DNA of 64,000 nt from Macrostomum hystrix (taxonomy: Eukaryota; Animalia; Platyhelminthes), in NCBI GenBank assembly GCA_950097015.1, contig CATNEN010000007.1, positions 248,001 through 312,000 of the forward strand, given 5' to 3'. Below are positions 19,415 to 62,100 of this stretch, piece after piece; positions within the stretch are counted from its first letter, which is position 1; each line of letters begins with the position of its first letter. The notes under the pieces are model-generated. The model was not told the origin of the DNA. It was given only the letters and a program-made list of their open reading frames with translations, and searched no databases. A program made the translations under genes and the position numbers.

Positions 19415-20110
19415 TCACCTCAAGGCCTGGGGATACACCACATTCTTCGTTCTTCCCCTTGGTGCGAAAATGAATAGGCCAGCTGGAGTTCCAACACGGG
19501 AGCAGGCGACATAAAGCTGCCCATGCAAGAAGCAAGGAGTCTCCAGGTTGATGCCAGCCACCTTCAGCGACTGTCCCTGAGCCTTATTAATAGTCATCGC
19601 AAAGCACACTCTCACAGGGAACTGCAGTCGCTTGAACTGAAATGGCAGGTCCGTGGGGATAATTGGAATCCAGGGAACGAACACAGACTCTCCTCTGCCA
19701 GATCCAGTCATTATCGTGGCCTCAATCACGTGTGGGAAGAGCCGCCTGACTATCAGTCTGGTGCCGTTACACAGCCTTGGCGCATTCAGGTTGCGGAGGA
19801 GCATAATTGGTGCCCCAACTTTCAGCTGCAAGTTGTGCGATGGAGTTCCAGGAGGATCTAGAGAGTTCAGAAACTCAACAGGATACTCCACAGCGGTGTC
19901 ATCAGTCAACGTTGTATCAATTGACTTGTAGGTGAAAACTGCACCTGGCAACTCCTGAAGCAGTTGGTAGTTAATTTCGTTGGTGGCATCATTTCTAGGA
20001 CACAGAATTGCCCTCTCTGACAGCCAGTCAACGTCAGCATATCGAGAGAAATAGGCTGGCTGGAGAGAAATATCGACCGGAGAGCCCTGCGCACTGGGAC
20101 GCCACCGCAC
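19415..20110 (-). pseudogene. Helitron Pif1-family helicase C-terminal fragment
   Basis: RAILCPRN, LQLKVGAPIMLLRNLNAPRLCNGTRL, FKRLQFPVRVCFAMTINKAQGQSL, HGQLYVACSRV, TKNVVY. The Rep domain and Walker A are absent. Confidence 0.9.
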
Positions 20111-21160
20111 TCACCGCACTCAGTCTCAGTGCTGCTTGGGGGCCAGTAGACAGTCTAGGGGTTTGGGCTGTGTACATTCACGGCTTGAAATACAATGTAC
20201 AGTCTGGGGCTTCGGCGCCCAGGGAAGGGAGGGGGTGGCTGTAATAAAATTTGGCCCGCAGAGTGGCGGAGGGGAGTTGGGGTGGCTGTCCTCGGAAAAC
20301 AAAAAGTGACTCACTTTGAGATGATGCAGCTTTGCTCTGGATTGAGTAGAGATGTTCAAAATTGACAGCATTGTTGGAAAACATGTAAAGTGTAAGTGGA
20401 TCAAATTTGGAGAAAATCTGACAAAGTGGGGCGACAATATGTTGAATTGAGTGATTTTTTGACGATTTTTGAGCAGTTTTTTGCTTTTTTGAGCAGGAAG
20501 GAAATGATTTTTCGGGAATTTGAGTAGCCTATTGCACTCAGCGTAGGTGGTTTTAGGTATGTGCAAAGTTTGGTGCGATTTGGTTGAGCGGTTTCGGTGT
20601 CTATAAAGACAAAAGGTTGCACACACACAGACAGACAGACAGAGTTTTCACTTTTATATATATAGATTATTGGTTAAATGAAGCAATCAATCATCTCTCT
20701 GTCTTTGCCTGTAATTGCTAAGTTTCAGCATTCAGCAGTCACTAGGCAGCTGATCTATTTTATAAAATTTCTAGCTTCAGTTAGCAGCTAGCTAATGCTT
20801 ATATATCTAAGTAAAAATACTTAGTTTGCTTTTGCTTTTAAAATTGTACAATTAAGTGATTGTTAGCAAATTTTTTTTGCATCAAAGCAAAAACAACTAT
20901 CACTCTCAAATGTTGCTAGCTAGCTAGTAGAACACATTTATTACTTGATAATAGCAAATATTGATCAGCTAATATATCATATTGATCAAAATATCCTATA
21001 TATCACAATATCATAATTTTGTGGCTTCAATTGAAGTAGGGCCTGATAAAGCACTTAAGCACAAAAGGCAAAGCTACATAATAGATAAGTGCATATTATT
21101 ATGACAGCAAAGCAATAGTATATTGTGTATAATATGTTCTTTCTAGATAGCTGCTACTAT

Positions 21161-21519
21161 AATAATAATAATTGCAGGAGTGCTGCCAGCAACACTTGGC
21201 ACATCATTTAGTGACCCGCAGCCAGCGAGGAGGCAATTCTGCCCAGTTTGCTGACTCATGAGCATATGTGCACACAGATGATGTACACAGGCATACACTC
21301 ACACAGGTGTGTACATCTGCCCTGACTTTCTCATCGTTAGGCAGTGTACACTTCACTGTGCCTTGGAGGTTGGCACTCAAGGGCGTAAATTGCACAACAA
21401 GCCCTCAAGCCTTCTCTCCGTGGCTGCGCCCCAAATAAATGTGGCCTCGCCATGGAATCGAACTTAATGACCGTGGTGCGAGAGGCAAATGCGATAACCT
21501 CTCTGCCACTGACCCCCTT
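21161..21519 (-). mobile_element. tRNA-derived SINE, copy 2
   Basis: Reverse complement of copy 1, with B box gttcgattcc and (TTA)n tail. TSD tagctgcta(c/t)tat at 21148-21160 and 21520-21532. Confidence 0.85.
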
Positions 21520-21845
21520 TAGCTGCTATTATCTAGCTAGTAAGCATAAAACATAATTATACTCAAGTACAGACTAGTCTAGTAGTTATTACAAACTAGT
21601 TTAAGGAGCCATCAGAAACCTAAACTCAATTGATAACTTTGTTATATTGATAAATATATTCACAAATGGCAGTTTTTGCATTAAAAAAGACTCTTCACCA
21701 CCTGGTCGTTCACTTTAACTCAGTAACTAAGTATTTCAAGACTAATAACTACCATCTTCTAGAAAATAATCTCATGTAGTTTTCTACAAATTTTTTAACG
21801 TAATAATTTTAAATAATGAATTTTTCATTCCCTTGTCTCAATTAG

Positions 21846-22544
21846 TTCCATTTGAAGAGACTGCTGGGGTGAAGTACAACGCCAGCTCCAAGGTCCTGAA
21901 GCGACTGCACCGATACCTGCAGCAGCATCAGGATGAGCTGTCCAGCCTGCTTTCATTCGCTGGTAGGCTCGCGACCATACAAATTCAAATTGCGTCTACA
22001 TCGGATGGCAGTACCTGCAGTAGCAGCAGCAGCGGTGGCGGAAGCGACGACTCAGACAGCGATGAGAACAGGGAGCTGGGCAGACTGTCTCGACTGGTCA
22101 TCAGCATTGAAGTAAGCGCCAGCCAGCAGGTGGTTCAGCTGAAACAGTTTCTGCAGTCTGGTCAACTGGACGCCTGGCTCACCGACCTGCTGCCCAAGGT
22201 GAAGGGACTCAAGTTTTTCCGTGTAATTCTGGGCAAGGCCTACTACTCGGCTGTGCTCAGAAGGCTCAGAAAGGAGGAGTAAGCCAATTATTTATTATTA
22301 TAATTATTAAAACTGAGTTATTTGCATAGATAGTCTAGTTAATAATACTGCTTTTGCAACTTCAATTTTCAGAAAGCGACTCAAAAAACAGGCTTCGAGA
22401 AAGCGTCAGCAGTCACCGGGCAGCCCTGTTCCTAAGGCTGCAGGTGTGGATGCCGGCCAACCACAGTGTCGACTCAGGCTACCGAAGCCTCCGCCATCGA
22501 CTGGTGCTTTGGATTTGGAATCATCTGATGAAACTGATGGTCCT
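21846..22544 (+). CDS. Exons with a TRADD-like N-terminal domain and basic/Pro linker
   Basis: VISIEVSASQQVVQLKQFLQSGQLDAWLTDLL...VILGKAYYSAVLRRL fits the invertebrate TRADD-like-N pattern (SI.V...l..L...SG.L...L...Y). A phase-2 intron joins it to KRLKKQASRKR...ETDGP, which ends at a phase-0 donor. Confidence 0.5.
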
Positions 22545-25500
22545 GTAAGCCATGGTTGAGGAAATCGACATGGACAGGTTTACTGCATTTTAATAGCATT
22601 GCACTTTAGAGGTATAAAAACAGTCCTGAAATAAGTTTGGGCTTCAATCCACAATTTTATGGCATTGCTTTATCGATCAAAAGCAAGAGAAGATAAAGTA
22701 GTGAGTGAAAACAGATATTTTAAACTGTTATATTACACAGTTTCACCGTCTTGAAATTTCTGGCGTCGTAAACAATAGACAGCTTGCACTCTTGCAGCCC
22801 CACTTGTGCTGAGGCAGGGTGGCCAAATGAAAACGGAGTAGTAATAATTGAGAAGTTGAAAAGGAACGCAAGGATTGAAAAGTCTGCTCGCACTATTATG
22901 TGGAGAGCAACCGTTTACAATCTATTTTGACTGTCAAGACTGCCACATCAACAACCAACCCCCACCCCCGGCTTAGACCTGGTTTGGGCAGACAGTAAAA
23001 TCCCCCCAGCCAATCACCACGCGTCACGCGCTTGCACTCTAGGCGGCATACAAGCTGCATACACTACACCACTCAAGCCTGACAGGCTTGTATTATTAAA
23101 TCCATACGTCGATGTTATTGCAGCATTGTCGTTTAATATAAGTACAAGCGTATACATATATCTTGACTATATTTTGTAACAACTTTTCTTTACTGCTTTT
23201 TAGTGTTTTAAATTCGTTGCACATTTGTTGATTATTTTTTATTTACTACTTGTGGAACAAAAGCAACTTATAACTGTCATTTCACAACTTTGACCGTATT
23301 TGTAATCACACAAATAAAAATCGTAGCTAAAGGAATCTTCTTTACTCATGTTTCAGAGTTGGTTGCTGGAAGAAGAATATGCCAAGCTTTCACAGACTGC
23401 TCAGTCCAGCTATGTGAGTTCGGCTGTTAAATGACGGTTGAATTGTGCGAGCATATTTTGGGGCATTAAGATCCGAGTGCTGTTCTTAGCTGTATTATAA
23501 TTTGATATGGTTTTAGTATTATTGCACTGTGCTTAGAAAATCCGTAAGATATCCGTGAAAAAAAATTTTTAGGTGGCCTTCGAATTTCGCCTCTTCTGTG
23601 CTGACATTGTCAAACATTTCACTGAGCTTGCACCAAAGCAGTCCAGTCTAACTCAAGATCTAGAGCGGAGACTCGTCAAAACTGTACTGGATGCAACTTG
23701 TAGTGTAAAAGTGTCATTAAATCTAACCAATACAAAGAGAAGGAAATCTTCTTCGATTGAAATTAAAACCAACGCTTTAATTGACCTTTGTTACAACCTT
23801 CCCACTTGGCGTGTGTTCGTTTCTGTCAATGACATTGCCAGCATTGAGTACAGCTATGAGTTGAGCAACTGCAATTCGACTCCGCAGTTTAGAAGTGCGC
23901 AGCAACTTGAGGCTCTTTGTGAGTCCTCAGAGCTTATTGAGTCTCTAAAAGCGACTCGAGTTTCAGACGTGATTATTGATGGCTGCAAAAACACAATGGC
24001 CGTTCGCCTCATCGGCGGTGGGCTGAGAGAGTTTGAAACTCGTCCTCTCAGGGATGGCCAACGTGTCTGTTTTGACGCTCTGTTCCAGCCGTACATCAGC
24101 TGCGTTGCAGGAGAGGCGACTTTGTTCTGGAGAATCTTCGAGTCACACGCTGTTTCATTGGCCCTCACAGGAAGCCAATCGATTCCTGACCACGCGGAAG
24201 CTGCCATTGCCACAGATCTGTGTTGCACCGCGTTACTAGAAGGATGGCTGAAGACTGTGTCTAAAAATGCCAGCGGCAGTAGAATAGATTTAAGCGCCTG
24301 TGAATTCACGTCTGCTATAAAATATTTTCTCCTAGCTGCTGCCTGTTCACTAAAGCCATGCGGAATGACTTTGCTTTTCCGAATTTCGTTGGCTATTCAT
24401 CAACAATTCAGCGATACCAAAGAGCCCTTCTGGACTACAGAAGAGGCACATTTGCTGCTGCAATGTTTTCATCCGTCAGCTTTAGGTGATGCCGATTTGA
24501 AGGTCTTCGGCTTTCTGAATTCTTTTCTACCATCGTTTCTGCACATGTGCCATTGTGCCCAGCTGCTACACCCATCTTCGCAACCAGAGTTATTTCTGAG
24601 TTTGATAGAAAAAATGGGTCTTTGCGAGCGTGGCGCGGATAATTTTAGATCTGCATTCACCCGATACCTATTGAAGTCAGGCCTGATCAGGGACTTCACC
24701 GCAAAAAGTTTTATGATACTTATTTCTTCGATATTTAAACACTCAGTGGACTCAGGAGATCTGAGTGTTCTGTTGAATGAGTATCTAACAGTCAATGAGT
24801 TAGTGCAGACCCTCAATGATTTCAAATCTTGTGAAAATCTAACTTCTCCGCTACTGCAGATTGTGACTAATTGTAGTATCAAAGTTTCATTTAGAAAGCA
24901 ACTTAAAGAACTTCAGGCCAAGGAATTCTACCAGATATGCGATGTTATGACAAAGGTAAAAAGTTTACCGCGAGTTGATGAGCCCACCTGGCACTCTGAA
25001 GGAATTCCAGTTATCCGAGCTGTCGTTCTTGCCTCCGCCGCGTTAGGAAATGAAAATGAAAACTCATTGTCCAACCGACGGGCTCTCGCTGAGCTGCTGA
25101 GTTTGAGTGGTCTGCTTGACGAGCAGTTCACTCTGAACTTCATGGCCTCTGTGTTCCAGTCGAACTGCCAGTGGCTAGTTAAATCAGTTCTTGACAATTT
25201 TGATTCCACGCTGCTGCAGCATATTGACGCTTCAGAGTGTTGCGAGTTGGCGCCAGCTGTGACTCAACTCATTCGCCTGAGCTGTGAATACTATTACAAG
25301 TCTCCGTGTTTAGTGGCATCAGCTCTACGTGAAAAGTCCAGCAATGACCACTTCAGGACTGTTTGCCTGCAATGTGCGGTAGAGCTGCTCGCAGAGCAAC
25401 CGTTTACAAAGGCTTCTATCGAGATTAATTCTAGAGATGCAATTCATTCAACTGAACTCATAAGAGCGATTCTCCAAAGCTTTCACCAAAGACTGCTCAT

Positions 25501-28500
25501 TGCATCTTGCAGCGCCTCTGAGAAGGACATCATTCTGGACTATTTGGAGAAAAATGTTTCAAACATTTTAAAGAAAATTGAGCCGATGTAAGTTTCATAT
25601 TTGGCATGTTTAGATTCTTAGTAGTAAATATAGGAATTATGTTTTGTAGTTGTATCTCATACATGTCATATCGGGGCCGAATTTCCAAAGGATTCAAAAG
25701 TAAAGTCAGGCTGTTTGGTCAGCTCTGTGCTCTTATTCCTAGGTATCAGCTGCTGGTGGTTGTCTTCAAGGTTGTTTTTCAAGCACATACGAGTTGTTAT
25801 ACAATTAAACTCGGAGCTCTCATATCGTTGCTGCTTCATCCAGAATTACTGATTCCTTTTAAAATATTTTTAAGTCTTGTTACTGGGGTATTGTTAACTT
25901 TTTCCCAAGCTTTCTCTTTTGCGTAGCGTGTCTTTAAAAAGTTGAATTCGCTTAAAAACTTTATATTTATCATTGCAGATTTGTTTACAAAATTTTCGCC
26001 ATCTGCTTGGAAAAGTTGGTTTCTGAAGTAACTTGTGATCCATCGGCTGTATTTGATTTGCTGCCTGCGCTTCTAGAAAATCAAAGCCTCTGGATTTGGA
26101 TGACCAGCGATTGGCACCAGGATGTTTTGTCCCTCGCAGAGAATCTTCGTCAGCGAATATTTAGCAAAGTTCAGTGCTTGTTAGAACTCAGCAAAATGCT
26201 TTTTTGTGATGAACAGCAGGACGGCCTTTGTCTAGAGGAATTCAATAGATTCCTTTTCATCATGGCAAAGCCGGACAAAGCTCGTACATTGACAAACGAC
26301 AGTCCTGGAAGCTGCTTGTACGACACTTTCGATTTGTTGTTGCTTGCATTATTCGGCCGTAATTATGTTTCCTTGCAAGGTTCAGCAGATAGAGTGAAGT
26401 TACTTGAAGCCAATGTCCATGCCTTGAAGGAGCAGTCAAATATTGTTGAGGATACTTTAAGCTTTCTAGCCTTTGTCGCTCATGATGAAAAGAAAACGAA
26501 CATGCACCTGCCAGATTTCCTAGAGAAGCAATCAGTTTTTTCTTCTCTCAAGGAGCAGTTTGGTAAATCCGTTGGTTCGTTTAGGGGCGACACCTTGGTC
26601 TTTCAGATCTTCGGAAATATAGACTTGTCTCATATTATTGCTGTGAGGTCGCTTACGGGATCCTTGGTCTTCAAAAGAGTGCTCATCCGATGTAACTTAA
26701 AGCTATGTTCCCCAGAGCACCAGAAATCGGAAGTCGACTTTGACAAATATGTCGTCTGCGTTCCATGCCATTATTTAATTGATAAACTGCTTCCTGCTGC
26801 ACTTACCGCTTACAAGGAGATCATAACGTCACTTGAGACTGGCGCCATCACTATCAGCCAGGCGAAATTGAATCTTGGTATTGATGATGAAACGATATTT
26901 AATGACGATATCGAACGAAGAGCTGCAACGTCACTTGGAGTTTCTGAAGGTATCTTCCAGTTATTATTTCCCGTGAGTATTTTTTGTAAATTCTAAAGCA
27001 CACTTGCATTAACTATAGCTAATGCAAATAGTAGTGATTCTCTATCGGTACCGTATTGTCAATAACCTAGTCTATTAACCCACACAGTTACACACAGTTA
27101 CTTCTGCTTTTAGCTTGATTGACAGAAACATATTTTTACGTAAAAATAGACAAATTAATCTAGAAAAAATTGTAATATTTTATTTGCTTGGCTCTAAGAG
27201 AAACATTTTTATGATTACGCTCGTACACATGTAAATCTGCGTGTGTCGCACAAAACCTACTGCTCCTTTTGTGCACAATTCAGGTATCCTGGTTGACGAT
27301 GGAGGACTACCTAAAGCTGGATGAGCGTTGTAAATCTCTCTATGTAAGTGCAATAAAAGTAAATTCATATTTTGTCTGCACCGATTGCCGGAAATAACTA
27401 AACTTTCTTCTACTTCGAGCTTATGTGTCTATCTAATGAAGGTTCATTCACACCAACTTCAAACACGTCAAATACACGATTTTTATTCTTCTTGACTTTA
27501 ACTCTAAGTGATTTTAATTAAAAAAGCAAGTAAATGAACACAAAAACAAGTTCTTTGATGGCAGCGTGAACGAGCCTTAATGTTATAATATACAAAAATA
27601 CAAAATAGTAAAGTAACATACTGGGGTTGACAGTTTGCAGTGTCATATTGCAAATTTCAACCCAAGCAGTTAGCAGTGTGCGCTGTAATGTATTCTTTAA
27701 AGTTTACGTGCTCCTGTAATTCATTAAAATGATTAAACTAATCTTGCAACACTTCAATTAATCAATTATCTTTCTGTTATGAAAAAGTTGCATTTGTATT
27801 TGCAATCCAAAATAATTCTAAAAACTGTATTTTCCCACATCCTTACTATTGATAGCGGAATGAACTAAATACTTCGTATAATCCAATAAACACAATCTTT
27901 TCAGATCCCATTTGACTTCCGTCTGTTCATCGCAGACATCGTCAAGTTCATTGTGGAACAGGTTTCTTCTGGAAGAAAAGGCATTGCTGATGACCAGCCC
28001 TTCATCAAAGATCTTACAAACTCATTGCTTGAAGCCAAAATCGACACAACAGTTTCACTCATGTTGGCAAACCAAATTTTAAGCATAACTTACAAAATCA
28101 GACGCAAGATAAATTCATTAAAAGAGTTCTACACACTTTCATCGTGGAATCTGTTTGTCCTCAAGAATAAGATTGGAAACTTCCATTACAGCTATCAGTT
28201 GGAATGCCGACATCAATTGCTGCAAGTGGCAAGTATCAAAGAAATACAAGATCACCTGAGGCGATTTGGTCCAGCTGTTTCTTCACAAATAGAGAGAGCT
28301 CTGGCCAGTTGCTCTCGAATATCCGACACCATAGTTAAGTGTTGTTCGAAAAAGAACAGCGCGCCCCCAGATGGAACTGTGTGTGAGCTGCAGACTCGCA
28401 CTCTAAGCAAAGACCGCCTCGTGTGTTTTGACGCTCTGATGGAGCCGTACATCGATTCAGTAGTCGGAAAGTCTCAATTCTTCTGGCGAATTTTCGCTTC

Positions 28501-31500
28501 TCATGCTGTCTCTTTGGCTCTGGCTGACTCATCTGCGATTACTAGCAGCCGTGATGTGGCCGAATTCATTGATCAGTACTGTTCACTAGTTACAAAATGG
28601 CTCAAGGCTGTCACAGAAAATGATTCCAAAAAGACACTCGAAGCAAACGCTTCGGAGTTCAATTTTGTCGTGAAGCAAATGCTGAGCTCTCCATTTGCAG
28701 AGAAATTCTCTTTGAAGGCAGGCGGTGGCATACTTATGTGCCGCCTCTCACTCTTCGTTCAACGCAGATTCGCTCCTGAAAACAAGTCATTTTGGAAACC
28801 CGAAGAGGCCACTCTGCTTCTGAGCTTCCTACAGAAACCGGCATTGAAAGGCGTCAGTTCTCAAGCTCTCCGCTTCCTGGACTCATCACTGCCTTCCTTC
28901 TTGTGTCTCTGCTACTGCGCCAAAGTGCTGCATCCTTCAAATTCAGCAAATGATTTTGCAAAACTGGTGAAGGATCTCGGTTTTGTTGAGCGAGGAGGTG
29001 ACAAGTTCAGGACTGAGTTTTCTACAGCTCTTCTCAACTCCGGCTTGCTGCGAAGTATCAGCTGCAGCAACTTCGCAAGCACTGTATCCGCTGTGTTCAA
29101 CGATGCAGAGGATTTCAATGATGCACACATATTATTGGAAGAATTTATTACTATTAAGGAGGATGCGGTTGAAATCCTGAGTTCATTTGACTCGTGTGAA
29201 ATTGTGAGTCCTGCACTGAAGCAGTTCATTCATAGATTTGGAGCATCAATACTTTACAAGAAGCACCTGAGTGATTTGCAGACGGAGAGCTGGCAGCGGT
29301 TCTGTGACATCATGCAGAAGGCAAAGAAGTTGCAGTGTGTGGATGAGTCTGTCTGGCACGATGAGGTGCTCCCTGTCATTCGAAGGGCCATTATTGCATC
29401 TGTAAGCAACAGTAAGTTTGAGAATGACAGCTCTGTTCCCAATCGGCAGGCTCTCTGCGATCTGTTAGGTGTAAAGGGTTTCCTTGACCCGACACTTGCT
29501 GTAGACTTCTTGAGTATCATATTTTCTTCAAAGACTCATTGGCTAATTAAATTTTGCCTTGAAAAATTTGCTGGCACTTTTCTTAATTCTTTACTAAATG
29601 CTAAACATGATTGTAAGATAAATATTATGTGTCAGTTTATTCGACTAAGCTGTGACTACTTTCACAAGTCTGTGTGTGCCACAATCGCACCACTGGTTCA
29701 AGATTCTTCATGCGATTCTTTCAAAGCACTTTGCAAAGAGTCTGCGCATCTTGTCCTAAATGAAAAGCCATTGACTAGAAGTATTATTGAGACCAACGTG
29801 GAAGACGGAATGGCTGCAGGTCTCAGTGATATTGTGTTTGAAGTGTGTTTGGTTAAGCTTCGCGACAATGAAGGCAACGAAAAGCAAAAGGAAGACATTT
29901 TGAAGTTTTTGCAACACCCGAACAGTTCGTTTAGTAAAGATAATCATTCAAGGTATGTTTCGAAACTATATTGCCTCATACCTCATTTAACAATTTAACG
30001 TAATTATTTTTTGTTTTTGACTGTTAATAAAATACATATTGACATTTACATTTGAGTTAAAAAGGCAAAATTGATTTACCAAGTTTTTTTAATGGCAGGT
30101 CTCTTTGCCGGCTGCTCGGTCTCAGCCTCGACAATTTCCTATCTGTGCAGTTTCGGCAGCGCCAGCCAAACGTCTTTGAGCTCCTACCAGCATTGCTAGA
30201 GAAGCATTTCATGTGGATGTGGATGACCAACCACTCCGATCAAGCCACTGAAGATCTTGCAGAGGACGTCCGTCAACGCATGTTTTCAAAATTAAAGTGC
30301 GTCGTTGACTTTGCCCGAATGCTGTTCGGTTTTGAGGCTGGAAAGGCTTTGTCTTTGACTGAATTGCATGAATTCGTCTCCATCTTCGATAAGCTTGATA
30401 AAAGCCGAAAATTGTCGCGTGAAAACTTCGAGTCAAATCTATTCGACTACTTCGATCTGCTTCTTGAAGCCTTCTTTGTGAACTTTCACCGTAATTCGCA
30501 GACCAAAGTGGTCGTTCAAATCATGCAGGAAAGTGAAAAGAAGTGGATTGAGCAGTCGGCAGTCGTGGATCAAATTTTTGAGTTTCTGTCTTTAATTTCT
30601 GGCAGCAACTCACCGCTGAATCTGAAGCTGCTGGATCTGGATGAAAAGCAGACTCGATACCGGTCCTTACAAAAGCAGTTTAATGATGCCGTCAGTTCTG
30701 TTGGACGCGACGATTTAGTGTTCCAGATTTTTGAGATCAGAAGCGTGCGGAACCTGGAGTTGATGAAGTCGCTGGTCAAATCTGAGTTGTTCAGAAGAGT
30801 GTTTGTCCGATGCAACCCTTCTTCTGGAGCCTCGAGAAATTCATTAGAGACTAAAAATGCTCGAGCCACAGTACAGACTACACCAGTAGCTCTGATGAGT
30901 GTTCAATGCAATTACTTTCTGGGCAAAATGATGCCAGAAGCATTTTCCGCGTACAAAGAGCTCCTTAAGTCAGGACTTACATTCGAGGAAGTTCTTGCGC
31001 TGTTTGGCTTTGGTTGCAGTACCATCTATGATCTCGAGGCCGAAAGAAACGCGACGGCATATGCAAAGTTGGCAGCTGAAGATATTTCGCGACTTTTCAG
31101 GGTAATTGTTTGATTATTTGCTTTTCCTGGCTCCATCGTTATTATTTTGCATGGTGGTTATTTTTTCGAACGTGCAGTTACTGAGACGAGAGTCGATGTA
31201 CTCTGCTGAAACTAAGTTGGGCACGTAATTGGAAGGATATAGTGTTTGCATACGAATGTATTCATGCCTGAGCACTATATTTATTTATAGGGCTACGCAA
31301 TGAAAATGCGATGAATGTACGCATCCTAAAAAGAAAAAAGCCTTTGGATTGGGTCAGTGTTCAAGACAAGAGTAGAACCATGAATTATAAACAATTTAGC
31401 TTTCTCTTCAAATTAATTGTTGAATTAGAGAATAAATATATCAACCACCTACGTCTATCCTCATAAAGCCACATTTGCCTACGCCATTGTCCACCTGGCA

Positions 31501-34500
31501 TGCCGATTTATAAATTTCTGACTGGATCCAGGTTGCTAACTTAAAAGTACTATTTCGCAAATGATCATGACCATTGGCAAATGATACGGCACTGGGCATG
31601 AGCGATAGTTCGATCTTAGCAGTTTAAAAAAGTCTAGAGGGTTTGAATGTTAGCAATAAGTTATGCAGTTTTGAATGATACTCACAGACAAATTAAATTG
31701 TAGAGCTATATGGAAGTAAGTTATGTGGTTTTTACACGGTTAGTGTGGCGAATTTTTTACCTCGTACAGTAAGATGATGAGTTGTCTTTAGAAACTCTAT
31801 AACACAATCGAGCATTATTCGAAATAATTTTTAATCTAGCCATTTAGATCTGTCCCTCTTGTCTTCGTGGTTAGTATCCACTTGATAATTCCAAACTGAG
31901 AAAAGTAGAAACAGGCGAATTCGAGCGAGGCACAATGTCTAATTTACCGTTTACAATGAAGTATTGCTATAGCGCAAAGTAATGAAATTGCAATCCGGAA
32001 AGACTTAGGCTATGTGTTCCAAGCAGCCAAAAGCATTCAAAACCCAGCTGATCGTGTTGACGATCAAAAACTAGTTTTTGCAATAGTGACCACGAATATT
32101 ATGTACAACATAAAATTATGACTTTGATCTACAGTAATTCATTGTTTTAACTTTTGAGTTGCATCACATTTTTAGGATTCATGGTTGACGCTAGACCAAT
32201 TTGTTGCTCTTGATAAGGACAATCAGCGTCTATACGTGAGTATATAAATCGAAATGTGTGTGGTATAATGCTATACTTAAATGTTATAACTTTACGCATC
32301 TACCTAATTAGTGCTTTAGACTAATATTTTGATGTCGCCCTTCTTCAGCCTAACGCTCCTGAGGGCGGTACCGGCTCCCAATGGATAGAACTGGGGAGAA
32401 CCGGGTTTCATCCCTCTGCACTACTCCACCTCTGAGGACATTGGTAGCTCTAGATGTGACATAGTGGTCACGATCATAGGGACCAATTAGGGGGAAAAGA
32501 CCAGGGTCGTGAGAAGGTAGGACCTGCTAGGCAGGGCTGCCACCAGCCACTTACGGGACAGCACAACCAACTGACCCTGACGAAACGGGGCTTCAGTTCT
32601 AAAAGAGAAGTGCTTTTGGCTCACCCCAAGGCCTATGGCCTGAAATAGGGATCCGATGTGTTAGACATGTGTTCACAGGGAGTTGACGTTCCAACAAGAG
32701 AGAGGACTTCTTAGGGATGCAGCTAAGAAAGAGGGCCCGACCCAAGGTTAAGAATGCCCGGATAGAGACAGCCTATAAGCTCTTACTAGGATTCAGTATT
32801 TACTCCTAAACACCAGTCTCCAGCAATGCAAGAGCAGGTTCAGGATCGGCTTCTATGTATCCTCGTGTGCAGGGACTACCTAACCCTAAGAATACATTAG
32901 AATTTCATTAGCATTACATTAGGCTCACATTAGGACATACTGTATTAATATGATGTACATTCGCGCTTGGATCTCAAGGCGACCAAGCCATCTATATATT
33001 ATCGATGGACTGATTAGTTCATGCTCTCATTCTTCGGCTCTGTGTGTTAGATTTGACTCATTCTGATCAGTTCATGCTCTCATTCTTCGGCTCTGTGTGT
33101 TAGATTTGACTCATTCTGGTCAGTTTATGCTCTCATTCTTCGGCTCTGTGTGTTAGATTTGACTCATTCTGATCAGTTCATGCTCTCATTCTTCGGCTCT
33201 GTGTGTTAGATTTGACTCATTCTGGTCAGTTTATGCTCTCATTCTTCGGCTCTGTGTGTTAGATTTGACTCATTCTGATCAGTTTATGCTCTCATTCTTC
33301 GGCTCTGTGTGTTAGATTTGACTCATTCTGGTCAGTTTATGCTCTCATTCTTCGGCTCTGTGTGTTAGATTTGACTCATTCTGGTCAGTTCATGCTCTCA
33401 TTCTTCGGCTCTGTGTGTTAGATTTGACTCATTTGAAACCTGTACCCCCTTAGGTGGCCTTCGAATTCCGTCTGTTCATCGCAGACATCGTCAAGTACAT
33501 TGTGGAACAGGTTTCTTCTGGAAGAAAAGGCATTGCTGATGACCAGCCCTTCATCAAAGATCTTACAAACTCATTGCTTGAAGCCAAAATCGACACAACA
33601 GTTTCACTCATGTTGGCAAACCAAATTTTAAGCATAACTTACAAAATCAGACGCAAGATAAATTCATTAAAAGAGTTCTACACACTTCCATCGTGGAATC
33701 TGTTTATCCCAAAGGAAAAAGTTGGAACCTTCCATTACAGCTATCAGTTGGAATGCCGACATCAATTGCTGCAAGTGGCAAGTATCAAACAAATACAAGA
33801 TCACATGAGGCGATTTGGTCCAGCTGTTTCTTCACAAATAGAGAGAGCTCTAAATAGTAGCTCTCGAATATCCGACACCATAGTTAAGTGTTGTTCGAAA
33901 AAGAACAGCGCGCCCCCAGATGGAACTGTGTGTGAGCTGCAGACTCGCACTCTAAGCAAAGACCGCCTCGTGTGTTTTGACGCTCTGATGGAGCCGTACA
34001 TCGATTCAGTAGTCGGAAAGTCTCAATTCTTCTGGCGAATTTTCGCTTCTCATGCTGTCTCTTTGGCTCTGGCTGACTCATCTGCGATTACTAGCAGCCG
34101 TGATGTGGCCGAATTCATTGATCAGTGCTACTGTTCGCTAGTTACAAAATGGCTCAAGGCTGTCACAGAAAATGATTCCAAAAATACACTCGAAGCAAAC
34201 GCTTCGGAGTTCAATTTTGTCGTGAAGCGAATTCTGAGCTCTCCATTCGCAGAGAAATTCTCTGCGAAGGCAGGCGGTGGCATACTTATGTGCCGCCTCT
34301 CACTCTTCGTTCAACGCAGATTCGCTCCTGAAAACAAGTCATTTTGGAAACCCGAAGAGGCCACTCTGCTTCTGAGCTTCCTACAGAAACCGGCATTGAA
34401 AGGCGTCAGTTCTCAAGCTCTCCGCTTCCTGGACTCATCACTGCCTTCCTTCTTGTGTCTCTGCTACTGCGCCAAAGTGCTGCATCCTTCAAATTCAGCA

Positions 34501-37385
34501 AATGATTTTGCAAAACTGGTGAAGGATCTCGGTTTTGTTGAGCGAGGAGGTGACAAGTTCAGGACTGAGTTTTCTACAGCTCTTCTCAACTCCGGCTTGC
34601 TGCGAAGTATCAGCTGCAGCAACTTCGCAAGCACTGTATCCGCTGTGTTCAACGATGCCGCCGTTTTCACTGATGCACAAAAATTGATTGAAGAATTTAT
34701 TACTATCAAGAAGGATGCGGTCGAAATCCTGAGCTCATTTGACTCGTGTGAAATTGTGAGTCCTTCACTAAAGCAATTCGTCCATAGCTTTGGAGCATCG
34801 ATACTTTACAAGAAGCACCTGAGTGATTTGCAGACGGAGTGCTGGCAGCGGTTCTGCGACATCATGCCGAAGGCAAAGAAGTTGCAGTGTGTGGATGAGT
34901 CTGTCTGGCACGATGAGGTGCTCCCTGTCATTCGAAGGGCCATAATTGCACCTGTAAGCAACAGTAAGTTTGAGAATGACAGCTCTGTTCCCAATCGGGA
35001 GGCTCTCTGCGATCTGTTAAATTTAAGGGGTTTGCTTGATACGAAACTTGCTGTAGACTTCTTGAGTATCATATTTTCTTCAAAGACTCATTGGCTAATT
35101 AAGTTTTGCCTTGAAAAATTTGCTGGCACCTTCCTTAATTCTTTACTAAATGCTAAAGATGATTGTAAGATGAATATATTCTGTCAGTTTATTCGACTAA
35201 GCTGTGACTACTTTCACAAGTCTGTGTGTTCCACAATCGCACCACTGGTTCAAGATTCTTCATGCGATTCTTTCAAAGCACTTTGCAAAGAATCTGCGCA
35301 TCTTGTCCTAAATGAAAAGCCATTGACTAGAAGTATTATTGAGACCAACGTGGAAGACGGAATGGCTGCAGGTCTCAGTGATATTGTGTTTGAAGTGTGT
35401 TTGGTTAAGCTTCGCGACAATGAAGGCAACGAAAAGCAAAAGGAAGACATTTTGAAGTTTTTGCAACACCCGAACAGTTCGTTTAGTAAAGATAATCATT
35501 CAAGGTATGTTTCGAAACTATATTGCCTCATACCTCATTTAACAATTTAACGTAATTATTTTTTGTTTTTGACTGTTAATAAAATACATATTGACATTTA
35601 CATTTGAGTTAAAAAGGCAAAATTGATTTACCAAGTTTTTTTAATGGCAGGTCTCTTTGCCAGCTGCTCGGTCTCAGCCTCGACAATTTCCTATCTGTGC
35701 AGTTTCGGCAGCGCCAGCCAAACGTCTTTGAGCTCCTACCAGCATTGCTAGAGAAGCATTTCATGTGGATGTGGATGACTAACCACTCAGATCCTGCCAC
35801 TGAAGCTCTTGCAGAGGACGTCCGTCAACGCATGTTTTCAAAATTAAAGTGCATTGTTGACTTTGCCCGAATGCTGTTCGGTTTTGAGGCTGGAAAGGCT
35901 TTGTCTTTGACTGAATTGCATGAATTCGTCTCCATCTTCGATAAGCTTGATAAAAGCCGAAAATTGTCGCGTGAAAACTTCGAGTCAAATCTATTCGACT
36001 ACTTCGATCTGCTTCTTGAAGCCTTCTTTGTTAACTTTCACCGTAATTCGCAGACCAAAGTGGTCGTTAAAATCATGCAGGAAAATGAAAAGAAGTGGAT
36101 TGAGCAGTCAGCAGTCGTGGATCAAATTTTTGAGTTTCTGTCTTTAATTTCTGGCAGCAACTCACCGTTGAATCTGAAGCTGCTGGATCTGGAAGAAAAG
36201 CAGGCTCGATACCGGTCCTTACAAAATCAGTTTAATGATGCCGTCAGTTCTGTCGGAACCGACGATTTAGTGTTCCAGATTTTTGAGATCAGAAACGTGC
36301 GGAACCTTGAGTTGATGAAGTCATTGGTAAAGTCTGAGTTGTTCAGAAGAGTTTTTGTCCGATTCAATCCGTCTACTGGTGGCTCGAGAAATTTATTTGA
36401 TACTGAAGTCCATCAATCTGCTGTACAAAAGAGACCTGGAGCTCTTATCAGTATTCAGTGCAACTATGTGCTTGACAAAATGTTGCCTGACGCTTGCGCC
36501 GCGTACAAAGAATTTTGGATTGCAGTGGAAGAAGGGAGCTTACAGTTAGAAAAGATTAAAGTATATATTTCAGACGAGTCAAAAATAGACTTATCACTGG
36601 AGCACGAAATTTTGTCCAACTTAGCCATATCTAGCACCGTTGTTGCAAAACTTTACAGTGTCCAGTTACATAAAATGTGGCGTAGCCGGGTCGAAGTGCT
36701 TCAGTTCTTTCTCACTGAGTTCTTTGATCTCAATGCAGCTTCGACCAACTCGCCTGAAAACTCATATGCCTCAGCTGATGATACCGTGTCTGATGACGAA
36801 AATACAGAGAAAGCGTCAGGTTTCTGTACTGAAGCTCTTACAAACCACGAGGATGCAACTGCATTAATCGAAGAGTTTTTGAGTCTCTGCGAGCGCACAA
36901 CCCTACTCAGCGAATACCTGGAAGTTTTTAACGATGTGTCTGGTGCTTTTGGTTGTGTAGATTCGAATGTATGGGAAGTGCTGGCCATTATGTATGAGAG
37001 TAGACAGGAGACTCTACCTTTTCTGAGAGAGCAGCAGTCATCAGACTTTCAACAGTTGCTTGATAACACGGACGATACGATTGCACAAGATCTAAGCCTA
37101 TCTGTAATCAATTCATTGATTTCGCTACAACAAGCCCTTCGAAGCTTTTTGTCATCAGGACCGAAAGTTTCTGTAAAAGAAATAGAAGAATCAGTTCTGC
37201 TGTCACTGAAGTACTTCGTGGCTGCGGATGGAGAAGTTAATATTCAAAATGAAGTCGGCGAGCGACAGAAAGCTGCTAAGAACCTGATTGATCGTATTAA
37301 GGAATGTAGCAGTCACATAAACTCGATCAAGACTCTTCATGCTAGTATGGGTTCTCGTGGTGAGACATCTAAAATTCTTACGTAG
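21846..37385 (+). CDS. Giant multi-exon RNF213-like N-terminal/stalk protein with triplicated module (~3,540 codons, 5' incomplete)
   Basis: Exons 21846-22278, 22373-22544, 23357-23413, 23573-25587, 25979-26972, 27284-27343, 27905-29952, 30099-31101, 32176-32235, 33454-35504, 35651-37385. All GT-AG with compatible phases, 10,628 nt plus 1 upstream base. Stalk-like motifs AYKEFWIAVEEGSLQLEKIKVYI, LETGAITISQAK and INSIKTLHASMGSRGETSK. Start exon not found. Confidence 0.65.
23357..26972 (+). CDS. Module A (57-nt micro-exon + 2015-nt + 994-nt exons)
   Basis: SWLLEEEYAKLSQTAQSSY | VAFEFRLFCADIV... | ...FVYKIFAICLEKLV...LLFP; a diverged paralog of modules B and C. Confidence 0.8.
27284..31101 (+). 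CDS. Module B (60-nt + 2048-nt + 1003-nt exons)
   Basis: VSWLTMEDYLKLDERCKSLY | IPFDFRLFIADIV... | ...SLCRLLGLSLDNF...RLFR; phases 0/2/0. Confidence 0.85.
32176..37385 (+). CDS. Module C (60-nt + 2051-nt + 1735-nt exons)
   Basis: DSWLTLDQFVALDKDNQRLY | VAFEFRLFIADIV... | extended last exon ending GETSKILT*. Near-identical to B over the large exon, the 146-nt intron and the start of the last exon. Confidence 0.85.
33012..33433. repeat. 53-bp minisatellite abutting the module C acceptor
   Basis: Unit gatcagttcatgctctcattcttcggctctgtgtgttagatttgactcattct, about 8 copies. Confidence 0.95.
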
Positions 37386-44300: not shown

Positions 44301-44717
44301 TAGAGGAAAAAAAGAGTGTCGTAATTCAATAATATTAAATATTTTAGTTTATTTGCAAATTATCAAAATTCATTTAATTCTGTAATATCGTAATCCTGTG
44401 TTGAAACGAATCCATGGCGAAACAATAAAGTTGATTTTAGAGCAGGAATCATTGAAGTCATCATCTTATTGACATCTATTGACAGTCGAGAAAGAAATTG
44501 AAATGATATACATCTAGCTTGTAAGCAAAACACCGGTAATCAAGAATCCATGAAGATAACTGAAAATGTTTTATCAATAACAAGAGTATAAATAATAAAT
44601 CCTAGGGTGACAAACGTTTAAATGTCAAATTATTATTCTGAGCAAGACAAGTTGGTTTGGGATCAAATTAAATATGCGCTAATATGTGAATAATTAACAA
44701 AAACCTACGACGTCGAA

Positions 44718-46615: not shown

Positions 46616-46699
46616 GGCTGCTATTTAACACTAAGAGTAGGAGATTGTAAAAAATAACAGGCCACACACAGGCGCTGCTATATGAAGGTACATGTCAGT

Positions 46700-59175: not shown

Positions 59176-62100
59176 TCAGACCTTGAAAGATCGTCGGCTT
59201 GCAAAAACTGAAATTAAACCAGAGGGCAAAAATGGGTCCTTTAAACTCACGCTTTTGTACAGGCAGTGGGTCAACGGGAAGAGCAGCTCCACAGCCGGCT
59301 TGTCCAGTACCGGGTCGCTGCGCACCCGAATAGGAGATGCACCCACCGGCAATAGCGAGGCGTCGCCCAGAAGATCCGCCATGGTAAGGCCGCACTGAGC
59401 GCTGTCGGCCATCAGCAGCCGAACGCAGGCACTCTTCAGCATGGCCAGCAGTGTCGGCTTGTCTCCCTCAGGCACGGAGTTCGTCAGCCGCTCAGCCGTC
59501 TCCTCGTGACCTCCAAAGCGTCTCTGCAGGTCCGTGCAGACGACACTGAACTGTTCCTGCTCAGATGCCTCGAGCAGAGCCGGCACCTTCGACAGGGCGA
59601 GGCCGCCAGCGCCCTCCGCCTCCGCTTCAGCCAGGGCGGCGCCACCGGCAAGCGATCCGGCATGCTGCCGCAGGAAGTCGGCCACGGTGCAGCCTCCGTC
59701 TGGAACGCCAAGTCGATGACAGAAACCCAGCAGAGTGCGGCATAGAGACGAAATACGGGCAGCACGAGTCGAGTCCTCTTTCTGGCGTCTTTGAAAAGCC
59801 GCAAGCTCCGCCTCGGACAGCCGCTCGCACTGACACATCTGCTTGAAGACTGAAACCAGAGTGCCGAGGTCGCGTTCAGTCGCGCCTGTCAGACGACCCT
59901 CCCATGGCTCCACACAGCCGAATCCCTTGCCGGCAAGCAGACGCTTGGCCAGTGTGGCCTCCAACAGCTCCCAGTGCACACTGGGGTCGCCTCCACCAGG
60001 ACAGCTGGCAAGGACTCGAACAAGCTCGTCCAGCTCCTCCATCGAGCAGCTCGGAACACTATCTGGTCGAGAAACGACATCACATAGAGGCAGTACACAC
60101 GAATTATCATCGAACAGCAGCTCAGGCAGCCGCTTTTCTTCAATGCACAACACAGCTACATGCTCCAAAAATTCGTTTACACCGGCCACAGATTCTCTTA
60201 GAGCCTTAGTTACTTCCGCTCTTTCGGTCAGCAGACTGTTCAGCAGTGATCGAGTTCTATCGAATGGGTTGTCAGCTCCAGAAACTCCTGTGGGTCTCAG
60301 GGCTCTCCAAGCGACAGAAGCCGAGTCCAGAATATCAGAGCCTCGAAACCGCCTCAAGAAGTCGTCGATTCGCATCGCTTCAAGCTCCTCTTGGGTCAAA
60401 GAATTCTCTGACTTTCGAAGAACCATCTGGTGCCAGAGAACCAGCTTTGATGCATGCTGCATTCGCACAAGCTTGTCAGAAAATCTTAGGATCAAATGCA
60501 TCATCGAATGACGCTCGCCTTCTGCTAAGTGACAGTCAAACAGCATACACGCGTCACTGAATGAGACTAGGCGCTTCGGGAAGAAAAGCGGGTTCGTAGC
60601 GATCGCCTTTACATCCTCTTTTGTTCTGTTGGATGGAACCAGCTCATTTGGCAGCTGGTCATCTGACAGATCAACGTTATCGACAAGACATGCAAGAGCA
60701 AAGTTCTCCACCACCCCCCGCTCACTTAATCGACGGCGTTTAAATTCACGAATGCTTTGCATTGACTTCAGCACATGTTTACCAACAAAGAAAGCCAAAT
60801 TTTCATACGGGTCGGAGCTATCTGATTGTTGTTTGCAAAAGAATAGCTCATCCTTGTTCTCTAGAATCGAATGCAGCAACCAGGTTGTTTCTTCACAGGA
60901 CAGATGGAGAGTACATTGTAGTACCCTAAACTTTTCGTCAATCTTCAGATCGTAATGAGCGGCAGTAGTAGAGTTTAAACGTTTTATGTCGATCAGTACA
61001 GCTTTCATTAATACACAGATAAATTCGGATACTAGTGGCACAGCTTCTGTCAAAAATTCTTCAGAAAACTCAACCATCTTTGAAGACAAATCTTGAGTCC
61101 AGTCGGAATGGCAAAACTGACAGGGATAGCTTGCATTCGGATCGTCAACGTTTTCTGAGCAAATAGTCACATTATAACACGAACACACACGAACCTGAAT
61201 CGCAATCTGTTGACTGTCTTTGCGGCGCGAAAAAACGATTTTGGATATCTCACGTCCATCAGAAATTTGAATATTAGATAATGTTTGCAATAGACCTCCT
61301 GCCTGCAAATCGGTTGACAGGCACACAAAAAGACCTGCGTAATACAGGGTTGCTAAGCAAACACCTTCGATGTTACACTGGGCCGTGAGATTGAAACAGT
61401 TAAAAATGCTCTCTTTTTCTCCACAAATTAGTCGGATGATGGCAGAACTACATGTGGAAGCTGGCACAATGTCGGCAAGGCTCAAAACCTCACGTGTCAC
61501 TTGCTTTTCTTGCACTTTGAAGTTGCTGATTGATTTTCTTAGCACAACCATCTCGACATAGGCGCTAATGCAATCAGATTGAAAACTTCGAAAGGCAGCA
61601 TCGTCTCCAACTAAGCTTTTTAACTGTTGCTTTAATTTTCCGAATTCATTAAAGTCCTTAATAATCATTGCCTGCTGATACGCAAACAAAGCTTGCTTAA
61701 ATACGGCTGGATCCTGACAAACAGCGAATGGATATCGAAGAGAATAAGCAGCAATAAAATCTGAGCCTCGACCAAGCTTCAGAAAATCTTCTCTGAAAAG
61801 GCTGCTGACAACTGAGGTGACACGATCGAACTTCAGGAATGTCTCGATCTCAGCTAAAGAGTAGCGACGCCTCAGAAATCTTAAGAAAGATAACCAGAGA
61901 GGATGTACAACATTAGTCTGAATCAGCTTGTTGACTTTTGCGAGCATATCATCTCTGTGCTCACCGAAGCACAATAAGTCGTTATGAGAAACCGTGGAGG
62001 TCTTGACTGAAGCATCAAAGTAAGCCAGAATATCGGACACATCAACCATTTCAGATAACCCGATAGCTAAAGATTTGTTTAACAGAGAACGGATATTCTC

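What the first reader, a model, noticed from the sequence alone, without database searches (positions are those of the whole stretch)
23357..37385. One giant gene built from three in-frame copies of a ~1,000-aa, three-exon RNF213-stalk-like cassette
The ORF track shows six separate ORFs, but each pair is preceded by a homologous micro-exon and every junction is phase-compatible (0-0, 0-2, 2-0). The cassettes can therefore chain A-B-C into one reading frame. Because each cassette is phase-symmetric, any can be skipped or used alternatively, giving length and sequence isoforms of a helical scaffold. I know of no described RNF213-like gene with this modular stalk expansion.
Basis: partly seen in the sequence, partly recalled or inferred. 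Interest (0 to 1): 0.8.

Follow-up and report, generated by a model that had tools for sequence, protein, structure and literature searches.

The report
Triplicated RNF213-arm-only flatworm gene
A Macrostomum flatworm gene appears to string three in-frame copies of the N-terminal arm of a neighbouring giant RNF213-like ATPase into one roughly 3,570-residue protein that has no ATPase or ligase part, and its second and third copies are kept nearly identical to the neighbour by gene conversion.

Summary
Three homologous 57-60-nt micro-exons each precede a ~2-kb and a ~1-kb exon. All introns are GT-AG.

Adding three upstream exons (ATG at 21452) gives a 12-exon model, 21452-37385. It has 3,571 codons and no internal stop.

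The cassette is the N-terminal region of a full-length RNF213-like gene (D). D lies on the minus strand, starts beyond the window's end and runs into its last 5 kb. D's AAA core matches human RNF213 at E 6e-73.

The plus-strand gene has no AAA or E3 part. No direct sequence or fold match to the mammalian N-arm was found, so "stalk-like" rests on paralogy and position only.

B, C and D are 92-95% identical in mosaic blocks. Their micro-exons, introns and B's tail are anciently diverged, which points to gene conversion rather than a fresh or artefactual duplication.

Changes private to B and to C show purifying selection. A Macrostomum lignano protein model (A0A1I8GWE3) chains the same cassette types in one frame.

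No transcript of this species could be examined, so chaining is the best-supported reading, not a proven one. Cassette skipping is untested. The contig is not human. I rate it a new variant of a known kind, of moderate interest.

The parts
21452..21539 (+). Exon E0: putative start codon (ATG at 21452), 88 nt, ends in phase 1, donor GTAAGC
   Evidence: The peptide begins MESN..., like the M. lignano D-ortholog P0002 (MESD...). Its phase fits the E1 acceptor.
21846..22278 (+). Exon E1: N-terminal exon shared with gene D and with the M. lignano models; phase 1 to 2
   Evidence: 64% identical to P0003 residues 16-153 and 34% identical (tblastx, best 56-residue stretch) to D's E1 exon. Donor GA|GTAAGC is at the same position as D's GA|GTGAGT.
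22373..22544 (+). Exon E2: short low-complexity exon, phase 2 to 0
   Evidence: Acceptor ttttcag, donor GTAAGC. It corresponds to 'KRARKQDSLRARQQ...RRLRIPK' in P0003.
23357..23413 (+). Micro-exon A (19 codons, phase 0-0)
23573..25587 (+). Cassette A, large exon 1 (671 codons + 2 nt, phase 0-2)
   Evidence: 48% identical to P0003 residues 197-835 and groups with it in the tree (100/99). 36% identical to C1.
25979..26972 (+). Cassette A, large exon 2 (phase 2-0), ending at donor CCC|GTGAGT
27284..27343 (+). Micro-exon B (20 codons, phase 0-0), 311 nt after the A2 donor
   Evidence: 81% identical in protein to D's micro-exon, while the flanking introns are at shuffled-sequence level.
27905..29952 (+). 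Cassette B, large exon 1 (phase 0-2)
30099..31101 (+). Cassette B, large exon 2 (phase 2-0). Similarity to C and D ends at 30959. The old tail 30960-31101 ends at donor AGG|GTAATT.
32176..32235 (+). Micro-exon C (20 codons, phase 0-0, no ATG)
   Evidence: 50% identical in protein to D's micro-exon, with no residual similarity in the flanks.
32904..33450 (.). 53-bp minisatellite inside the micro-exon C to C1 intron, abutting the acceptor
33454..35504 (+). Cassette C, large exon 1 (phase 0-2). The first 15 nt are A-like; the rest is B/D-like.
35651..37385 (+). Cassette C, large exon 2 (577 codons + TAG at 37383-37385). Similarity to D stops at 37379. This is the last coding exon.
59179..64000 (-). 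3' large exon of the full-length RNF213-like gene D. It continues beyond the window to about 76,000 in window-extended coordinates. D is the conversion partner of B and C.

Best explanation
Window 21452-37385 (+) is one 12-exon protein-coding gene of about 3,571 residues. It is an old paralog of the adjacent RNF213-like giant ATPase gene D, which lies on the minus strand with its 5' end beyond the window. The paralog has kept only the N-terminal arm.

Inferred history and function:
- Origin of the array: the arm module is a 60-nt micro-exon, a ~2-kb exon and the first ~1 kb of the next exon. It was duplicated twice in tandem between two phase-0 introns, so the three modules A, B and C read through in frame.
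- Age of the array: it predates the split from Macrostomum lignano.
- Homogenisation: the bodies of B and C are repeatedly overwritten by, or exchanged with, the arm exons of D through gene conversion. The micro-exons, introns and B's tail keep their old divergence.
- Function: the product is a long, mostly helical scaffold with no ATPase or ubiquitin-ligase part. It probably acts through whatever the arm of the full-length enzyme binds, as partner, competitor or adaptor.

Shown here: exon anatomy, phases, open frame, paralogy, the mosaic identity pattern, constraint, and an orthologous chained model.

Inferred, not shown: that the exons are actually spliced together in this species, and the function.
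For: - The frame check of 12 exons gives 10,716 nt, all introns GT-AG, no internal stop, and the phases close.
- The A2 and B2 donors sit at the same aligned codon in phase 0, just before the first stop. C and D have no donor there and read on.
- Only 311 nt separate the A2 donor from micro-exon B, and no E1/E2-like exon lies upstream of B or C.
- The micro-exons keep 45-65% nucleotide identity and a shared peptide, while their flanks are at shuffled-sequence level.
- B/C/D identity of 92-95% comes in mosaic blocks: B=C at 100% in some windows, B closest to D at 98% in others, C=D at 98-100% in others.
- The first 15 nt of C1 are A-like.
- Private changes: B omega 0.38 (p 1e-5), C 0.56 (p 0.04), D 0.40. 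The chance that random substitutions leave no stop is 0.025 for B and 0.12 for C.
- The profile search of 1.84 billion proteins found only four, all from M. lignano. P0003 reads E1, an A-type cassette, a micro-exon, a second cassette, then the start of a third, in one frame. The join between its second and third cassettes lies at the boundary homologous to the A2 and B2 donors.
- In the trees A1 pairs with cassette 1 of P0003 (100/99), and B, C and D cluster by species.
- D's AAA region matches RNF213 at E 6e-73.
- No AAA or E3 relic lies on the plus strand in window 1-58000.
Against: - No transcript or peptide of this species was available. Word searches with C1, A2 and P0003 found no protein of this species, within the length limits each search applies.
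- P0003 is a gene prediction of unknown evidence level. It is truncated and lacks the first micro-exon and most of the second cassette's exon 1.
- Gene conversion from the constrained gene D could import part of the apparent constraint into B and C.
- Spliced-leader trans-splicing occurs in Macrostomum (from my own knowledge). It could use the micro-exon acceptors to make separate mRNAs.
- The function is pure inference. The fold search gave only generic HEAT/TOG-like solenoid matches, and the model of exon 2 was too poor to use.
Confidence: 0.65

Rival explanations
1. There are three separate mRNAs, or two. A, B and C are transcribed together or apart. Micro-exons B and C receive a spliced leader by trans-splicing or have their own small 5' exons. 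This would yield three arm-only proteins of about 1,000-1,300 residues instead of one chain.
For: - Each of A2 and B2 runs into a stop within 3-7 codons after the putative donor.
- Micro-exon B contains an in-frame ATG.
- An AATAAA lies at 31431 in the B2 to micro-exon C intron.
- Trans-splicing is known in Macrostomum (my own knowledge, not tested).
Against: - Micro-exon C has no ATG, yet it is conserved as coding.
- The first in-frame ATG of cassette C is the Met at residue 53 of C1, which would cut off the invariant FxFRLFxADI start of the domain.
- The donors of A2 and B2 are conserved in position and phase between anciently diverged tails.
- No AATAAA or ATTAAA lies in the 311-nt A2 to micro-exon B gap.
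- The M. lignano model reads across the cassette boundaries.
Confidence: 0.17
2. Only the A part (E0 to A2) is a working gene. B and C are promoterless partial copies of gene D's 5' region, not expressed as protein. They look intact only because gene conversion from D keeps refreshing them.
For: - The bodies of B and C are 92-95% identical to D and start within about 35 nt of the exon-1 acceptor.
- Similarity to D ends abruptly at 30959 and at 37379.
- There is no AAA or E3 continuation.
Against: - The parts conversion has not touched (micro-exons B and C, B's tail) keep open frames, conserved peptides and both splice sites, while neighbouring intron sequence is randomised.
- B's private changes have omega 0.38, like D's.
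- All indels in the exons are multiples of three.
- M. lignano has the same multi-cassette order, so the copies are old and should have decayed if they were unused.
Confidence: 0.13
3. It is an assembly artefact: B, C or both are haplotype or collapsed-repeat duplicates wrongly placed in tandem.
For: B and C are highly similar over 3 kb at a constant 5.55-kb offset.
Against: - B and C differ by 4.7%, in a mosaic shared partly with D.
- They have unalignable flanks and very different micro-exons, 48% identical in protein.
- Their 3' ends differ (30959 against 37379).
- C's upstream intron holds a minisatellite that B's lacks.
- A haplotype duplicate would share its flanks.
Confidence: 0.03

Closest known systems
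RNF213 / mysterin (human, mouse; cryo-EM structure in PMC7311170)
   Same: The cassette is paralogous to the N-terminal region of the neighbouring gene D, whose AAA units match human RNF213 residues 2431-2937 at E 6e-73. Counting back from that match, the cassette falls roughly where the mammalian N-arm (residues 1-1290, a string of helical bundles) and the start of the linker lie. The model of large exon 1 is largely helical.
   Different: The plus-strand gene has no AAA core, hinge, E3 module or RING. The arm is present three times. No sequence, profile or fold similarity to the mammalian N-arm was detected. Even in D, Pfam and the PDB sequence search recognised nothing RNF213-like in the last 1,606 residues.
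Macrostomum lignano A0A1I8GWE3 (P0003, 1,492 aa, named 'C2H2-type domain-containing protein' in UniRef)
   Same: It is the likely ortholog. E1 is 64% identical and the A-type exon 1 is 48% identical. It is followed in one frame by a micro-exon, a second D-type cassette and the start of a third. The join between its second and third cassettes falls at the boundary homologous to the A2 and B2 donors.
   Different: It is a truncated prediction. It lacks the first micro-exon and most of the second cassette's exon 1. Its 3' end is unknown, and its evidence level was not checked.
Macrostomum lignano PAA67123.1 (P0002, 3,411 aa, AAA+ ATPase domain-containing protein)
   Same: It is the ortholog of gene D, with the same order of E1, low-complexity exon, micro-exon, exon 1 and exon 2 (60-76% identity).
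   Different: It has a single cassette that runs on into the AAA core. That is the ordinary architecture, also seen in the paralogs on contig C38.
Nebulin triplicate region (eight exons repeated three times in frame within a giant scaffold gene; PMC9109913)
   Same: It is a block of exons repeated three times in tandem inside one reading frame of a long structural protein. The copies are highly alike and the block is prone to copy-number change.
   Different: It belongs to an unrelated protein family. There the repeat lengthens a working filament ruler. Here the repeated unit is a truncated paralog's whole remaining body, and the similarity is maintained with a separate neighbouring gene.

Membership tests
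RNF213 / mysterin family (AAA-E3 giant ligases) | Dynein-like core of six AAA units with the conserved AAA3/AAA4 region | tested here: not met
   For the plus-strand gene, tblastn of D's AAA and C-terminal exons against window 1-58000 found only the arm parts, and Pfam found no AAA in any of the six ORFs. The neighbouring gene D does meet it (E 6e-73 to RNF213, Pfam AAA_5 and AAA).
RNF213 / mysterin family (AAA-E3 giant ligases) | E3 module with RING and RZ finger | tested here: not met
   Pfam found no zinc-finger or RING domain in the plus-strand ORFs. C2 ends at a stop 4 nt after similarity to D ends. For D's last 1,606 residues Pfam and the PDB sequence search also found nothing, so D's E3 status stays open.
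RNF213 / mysterin family (AAA-E3 giant ligases) | N-arm: helical-bundle stalk N-terminal to the AAA core | tested here: inconclusive
   The cassette is position-equivalent through paralogy to D. The AlphaFold model of exon 1 (pLDDT 73) is helical from about residue 175 onward. Foldseek and VIA-align gave only generic solenoid hits (Z up to 8.2), with no RNF213 among the listed hits. Profile searches against PDB sequences were blank. The exon 2 model had pLDDT 49 and was unusable.
Macrostomum RNF213-like arm family (exon-1 domain starting FxFRLFxADI) | Significant full-length similarity of the ~680-residue exon-1 domain | tested here: met
   A1, B1 and C1 align end to end with D1 and with the C38 paralog. 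The identities to C1 are 36% (A1), 94% (B1), 90% (D1) and 30% (C38 paralog). M. lignano P0002 and P0003 match at E 5e-256 and 1e-213.
Macrostomum RNF213-like arm family (exon-1 domain starting FxFRLFxADI) | Conserved exon structure: phase-0 micro-exon, exon 1 ending in phase 2, exon 2 | tested here: met
   The boundaries and phases are the same in A, B, C and D. The exon 1/2 join is confirmed by M. lignano P0001 and P0002.

The most novel reading that the evidence does not exclude
The arm-only, triplicated protein is a dedicated partner or decoy of the neighbouring RNF213-like enzyme. By gene conversion its second and third arms track the enzyme's own arm sequence, so it competes for, or presents, the same ligands (pathogen or lipid surfaces, or the enzyme's own AAA/E3 docking surface). 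Cassette number or skipping would tune its reach. That would be a previously unknown way of regulating an RNF213-type immune ATPase, and the first hint of what the N-arm binds.
Probability: 0.12. Interest if true: 0.75.

Novelty: new variant of a known kind. Interest (0 to 1): 0.55.

Why it matters
The function of the RNF213 N-arm is poorly understood. A gene that keeps only that arm, multiplies it three times, is held under purifying selection, and exchanges sequence with the full-length enzyme next door argues that the arm can work on its own. It offers a natural separation-of-function construct in an animal that can be manipulated in the laboratory (its relative M. lignano is transgenic-capable, from my own knowledge).

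It is also a clean example of two things. One is in-frame exon-block triplication between phase-0 introns. The other is concerted evolution whose tract edges can be read to the base: 27877/27911 and 33460 at the 5' side, 30959 and 37379 at the 3' side.

For annotation, ab initio callers are likely to split this locus or miss the micro-exons.

Tried and rejected
- Direct similarity of the cassette ORFs to the 1,606-aa minus-strand ORF in the window: none. That ORF is D's C-terminal exon, not its arm.
- Pfam on all six ORFs: only sub-threshold noise such as FlaF and Katanin_con80.
- PDB sequence searches with C1, C2 and profiles A4 and A5: no RNF213 hit.
- Fold search of the C1 model by Foldseek and VIA-align wide: generic HEAT/TOG solenoids only.
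- ESM Atlas: generic helical scaffolds, with recognition below the useful level.
- AlphaFold of C2: pLDDT 49, so it was not searched.
- Bridging through a more canonical paralog on C38: its match to RNF213 also starts only at AAA3, and its exon 1 gives no PDB hit.
- Transcript-derived proteins of this species: word searches with C1, A2 and P0003 found none.
- Looking for the rest of an RNF213-like gene on the plus strand: nothing.
- Pfam on small ORFs downstream, 41.7-48.2 kb: nothing.
- The sigma-70 promoter and terminator scan is irrelevant for a eukaryote.
- The joined (spliced) protein model was deliberately neither built for nor sent to any search or fold tool. Exons were searched one by one by reference, and the frame was checked exon by exon.
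Full report
**What is there.** The window is eukaryotic and comes from a flatworm, not from a human. The only proteins related to the finding, in a library of 1.84 billion, are four Macrostomum lignano entries at 48-76% identity. The window is therefore a Macrostomum-type species other than M. lignano. Another agent's note names it M. hystrix; I did not verify that.

They form three pairs. A (23573-25591 and 26007-26996) is 34-36% identical in protein to B and C. B (27953-29998, 30145-31113) and C (33454-35550, 35697-37385) are 95.3% identical in DNA over 3,052 nt.

**Exon anatomy.** Each pair is preceded by a micro-exon: 23357-23413, 27284-27343 and 32176-32235. Each has a pyrimidine-rich AG acceptor and a GTRAGT donor, and all read in phase 0-0.

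- Large exon 1 begins in phase 0 right after ...ttag/...tcag and ends AT|GTAAGT (A) or AG|GTATGT (B, C) in phase 2.
- Large exon 2 begins after ...gcag with one base that completes the split codon.
- The exon 1/exon 2 join is independently seen in the M. lignano proteins P0001 and P0002.
- A2 ends at CCC|GTGAGT (donor at 26973) and B2 at AGG|GTAATT (donor at 31102).
- Both donors are in phase 0, at the same aligned codon, 7 and 3 codons before the first stop. At that site C has no donor and reads on.

**The gene is longer at its 5' end.** Upstream of micro-exon A lie three more exons. E1 and E2 are homologous to the 5' exons of the relatives; E0 is a candidate first exon.

| Exon | Coordinates | Notes |
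|---|---|---|
| E0 | 21452-21539 | ATG; peptide MESN..., compare MESD... in P0002 |
| E1 | 21846-22278 | 64% identical to P0003 residues 16-153 |
| E2 | 22373-22544 | short low-complexity exon |

These rest. Checked exon by exon, the 12 exons sum to 10,716 nt, which is 3,571 codons plus TAG. All introns are GT-AG, the phases close, and there is no internal stop.

I did not build or search the joined protein. All searches were made exon by exon, by reference.

**What the cassette is.** A genome search with C1 found five copies: A, B, C, one on contig C38, and one 6.7 kb beyond the window's end on the minus strand. I call that last copy D.

- Reading that region shows a full-length gene D. In window-extended coordinates its exons run from about 76,000 down to 59,179 on the minus strand.
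- D has the same E1, low-complexity exon, micro-exon and exon 1, but its exon 2 has about 1,790 codons and is followed by an exon of 1,978 codons.
- Residues 1325-1803 of the 1,812-aa open frame that holds D's exon 2 match human RNF213 residues 2431-2937 at E 6e-73. Pfam finds AAA_5 and AAA domains there.
- Counting back from that match, the cassette occupies roughly the place of the mammalian N-arm (residues 1-1290) and the beginning of the linker (1291-1774), as defined in PMC7311170.

This positional, paralogy-based link is the only support for 'RNF213-stalk-like'.

- Single-sequence and profile searches of the cassette against PDB sequences were blank.
- An AlphaFold model of C1 (pLDDT 73, helical from about residue 175) hit only generic HEAT/TOG-type solenoids. 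Foldseek TM-scores were at most 0.31, VIA-align Z at most 8.2, and RNF213 was not among the hits listed.
- The C2 model was too poor to use (pLDDT 49).
- A more canonical paralog on C38 also matches RNF213 only from AAA3 onward.

**The plus-strand gene has no enzyme part.** tblastn of D's exons 2 and 3 against window 1-58000 finds only A2, B2 and C2. Similarity of C to D stops at 37379 and the TAG follows at 37383. Polyadenylation-type hexamers follow from 37934. All full-length relatives carry a single cassette that runs into the AAA core: D, the two C38 paralogs, and M. lignano P0002. Only this gene and its M. lignano counterpart have several cassettes.

**The cassettes are old, and they are homogenised by gene conversion.**

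- C 33460-37379 is 94.8% identical to D, and B 27877-30959 is 92.0% identical to D. Both stretches include the intron between large exons 1 and 2.
- The identity is mosaic. In some 200-nt windows B=C at 100% with D at 93%; in others B and D are 98% alike; in others C=D at 98-100%.
- Outside these tracts the copies are ancient. The micro-exons share only 45-65% of nucleotides, and 150 nt on either side are at the level of shuffled sequence.
- B's tail (30960-31101) is related to C and D only at protein level.
- The first 15 nt of C1 are A-like, before the sequence switches to the B/D type.
- In trees, A1 pairs with cassette 1 of M. lignano P0003 (support 100/99). B, C and D cluster together, and the M. 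lignano D-type sequences cluster together.
- Within-species identity is 86-97%, against 54-70% across species.

The multi-cassette order is shared by both species, so concerted evolution is a simpler account than parallel fresh duplications. It also disposes of the assembly-artefact worry, because B and C differ in flanks, micro-exons, 3' ends and 4.7% of aligned bases.

**Are B and C used?**

- Changes private to one copy give omega 0.38 for B (37 synonymous, 50 non-synonymous; p 1e-5 against neutrality), 0.56 for C (p 0.04) and 0.40 for D.
- With as many random substitutions, the chance of staying free of stops is 0.025 for B and 0.12 for C.
- Exon length differences are multiples of three.
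- Micro-exon C has no ATG. No E1- or E2-like exon precedes B or C, and only 311 nt separate the A2 donor from micro-exon B.

These points fit internal exons of one transcript better than separate genes or dead copies. The caveat is that conversion from D may import some of the apparent constraint.

**Independent support from another species.** M. lignano A0A1I8GWE3 (P0003, 1,492 aa) reads, in one frame: M..., then E1, E2, an A-type exon 1 and an A-type exon 2, then a micro-exon (PWLMCQEFLRLDESSKKAY) and the start of a second exon 1. A second exon 2 follows, ending ...LLEVFNFFE at the site homologous to the A2 and B2 donors. Then comes the start of a third exon 1 (TPFEFRLY...), where the model breaks off.

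It is a prediction whose evidence I could not check. It skips some parts, and no longer version exists in the searched collections.

**What remains open.** No transcript of this species could be examined.

- Trans-splicing at the micro-exon acceptors would give separate arm-only proteins. This is the main rival.
- Cassette skipping is possible in principle, because every cassette is phase-symmetric. The odd joins in P0003 and P0004 could be isoforms or model errors.
- Function is inferred only: a long helical scaffold lacking ATPase and ligase, perhaps a partner, competitor or decoy for whatever the enzyme's arm binds.

**Verdict.** No paper mentions RNF213 together with Macrostomum. The nearest formal analogue is the in-frame triplicate exon block of nebulin (PMC9109913). 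I rate it a new variant of a known kind, interest 0.55.

Noticed in passing
window 32904-33450: A 53-bp minisatellite, about 10 copies at 97-98% identity, fills the 3' part of the intron before C1 and runs up to a few bases from the acceptor. The equivalent B intron has none.
   Followed up: partly
window 33460-37379 (+) and window-extended 72799-68875 (-) = G000:C7:316875-320799: C and D form a 3.9-kb inverted repeat of 94.8% identity. It brackets about 31 kb that contains the RING-UBL-TerD genes, so it is a ready substrate for inversion of that segment.
   Followed up: no
window 19415-20626 (-): ORFs with a Pif1 2B helicase domain (E 2e-19). This is probably a Helitron-type remnant, within 1 kb of the putative first exon of the arm-only gene.
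   Followed up: no
window 13969-14625 (+): An ORF with a Spy1/Speedy cell-cycle regulator domain (E 2e-21), likely an exon of an unrelated upstream gene.
   Followed up: no
window 44705-46628, both strands: Long ORFs open on both strands over a low-complexity repeat. Their Pfam hits (DUF3432, LepB_GAP_C and others, with 0 stretches) look like compositional artefacts.
   Followed up: no
L011:7720-9735 (-) = G000:C38:2093720-2095735: A more distant RNF213-like paralog also has a 672-aa exon beginning ILKEFRLCLPDI, the same exon-1 type. The genome search at E 1e-5 did not report it, so the arm family is wider than the five copies listed.
   Followed up: partly
P0004 (M. lignano A0A1I8GHJ8, 265 aa): This protein fragment joins the middle of an A-type exon 1 (90% identical to P0003 residues 562-763) straight to a D-type exon 2. 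It is either a model error or a splice that crosses cassettes.
   Followed up: no
G000, several contigs (C38, C15, C3, C11, C41, C1): At least seven further loci match D's AAA region at E below 1e-10, so RNF213-like genes are a multi-copy family in this genome.
   Followed up: no
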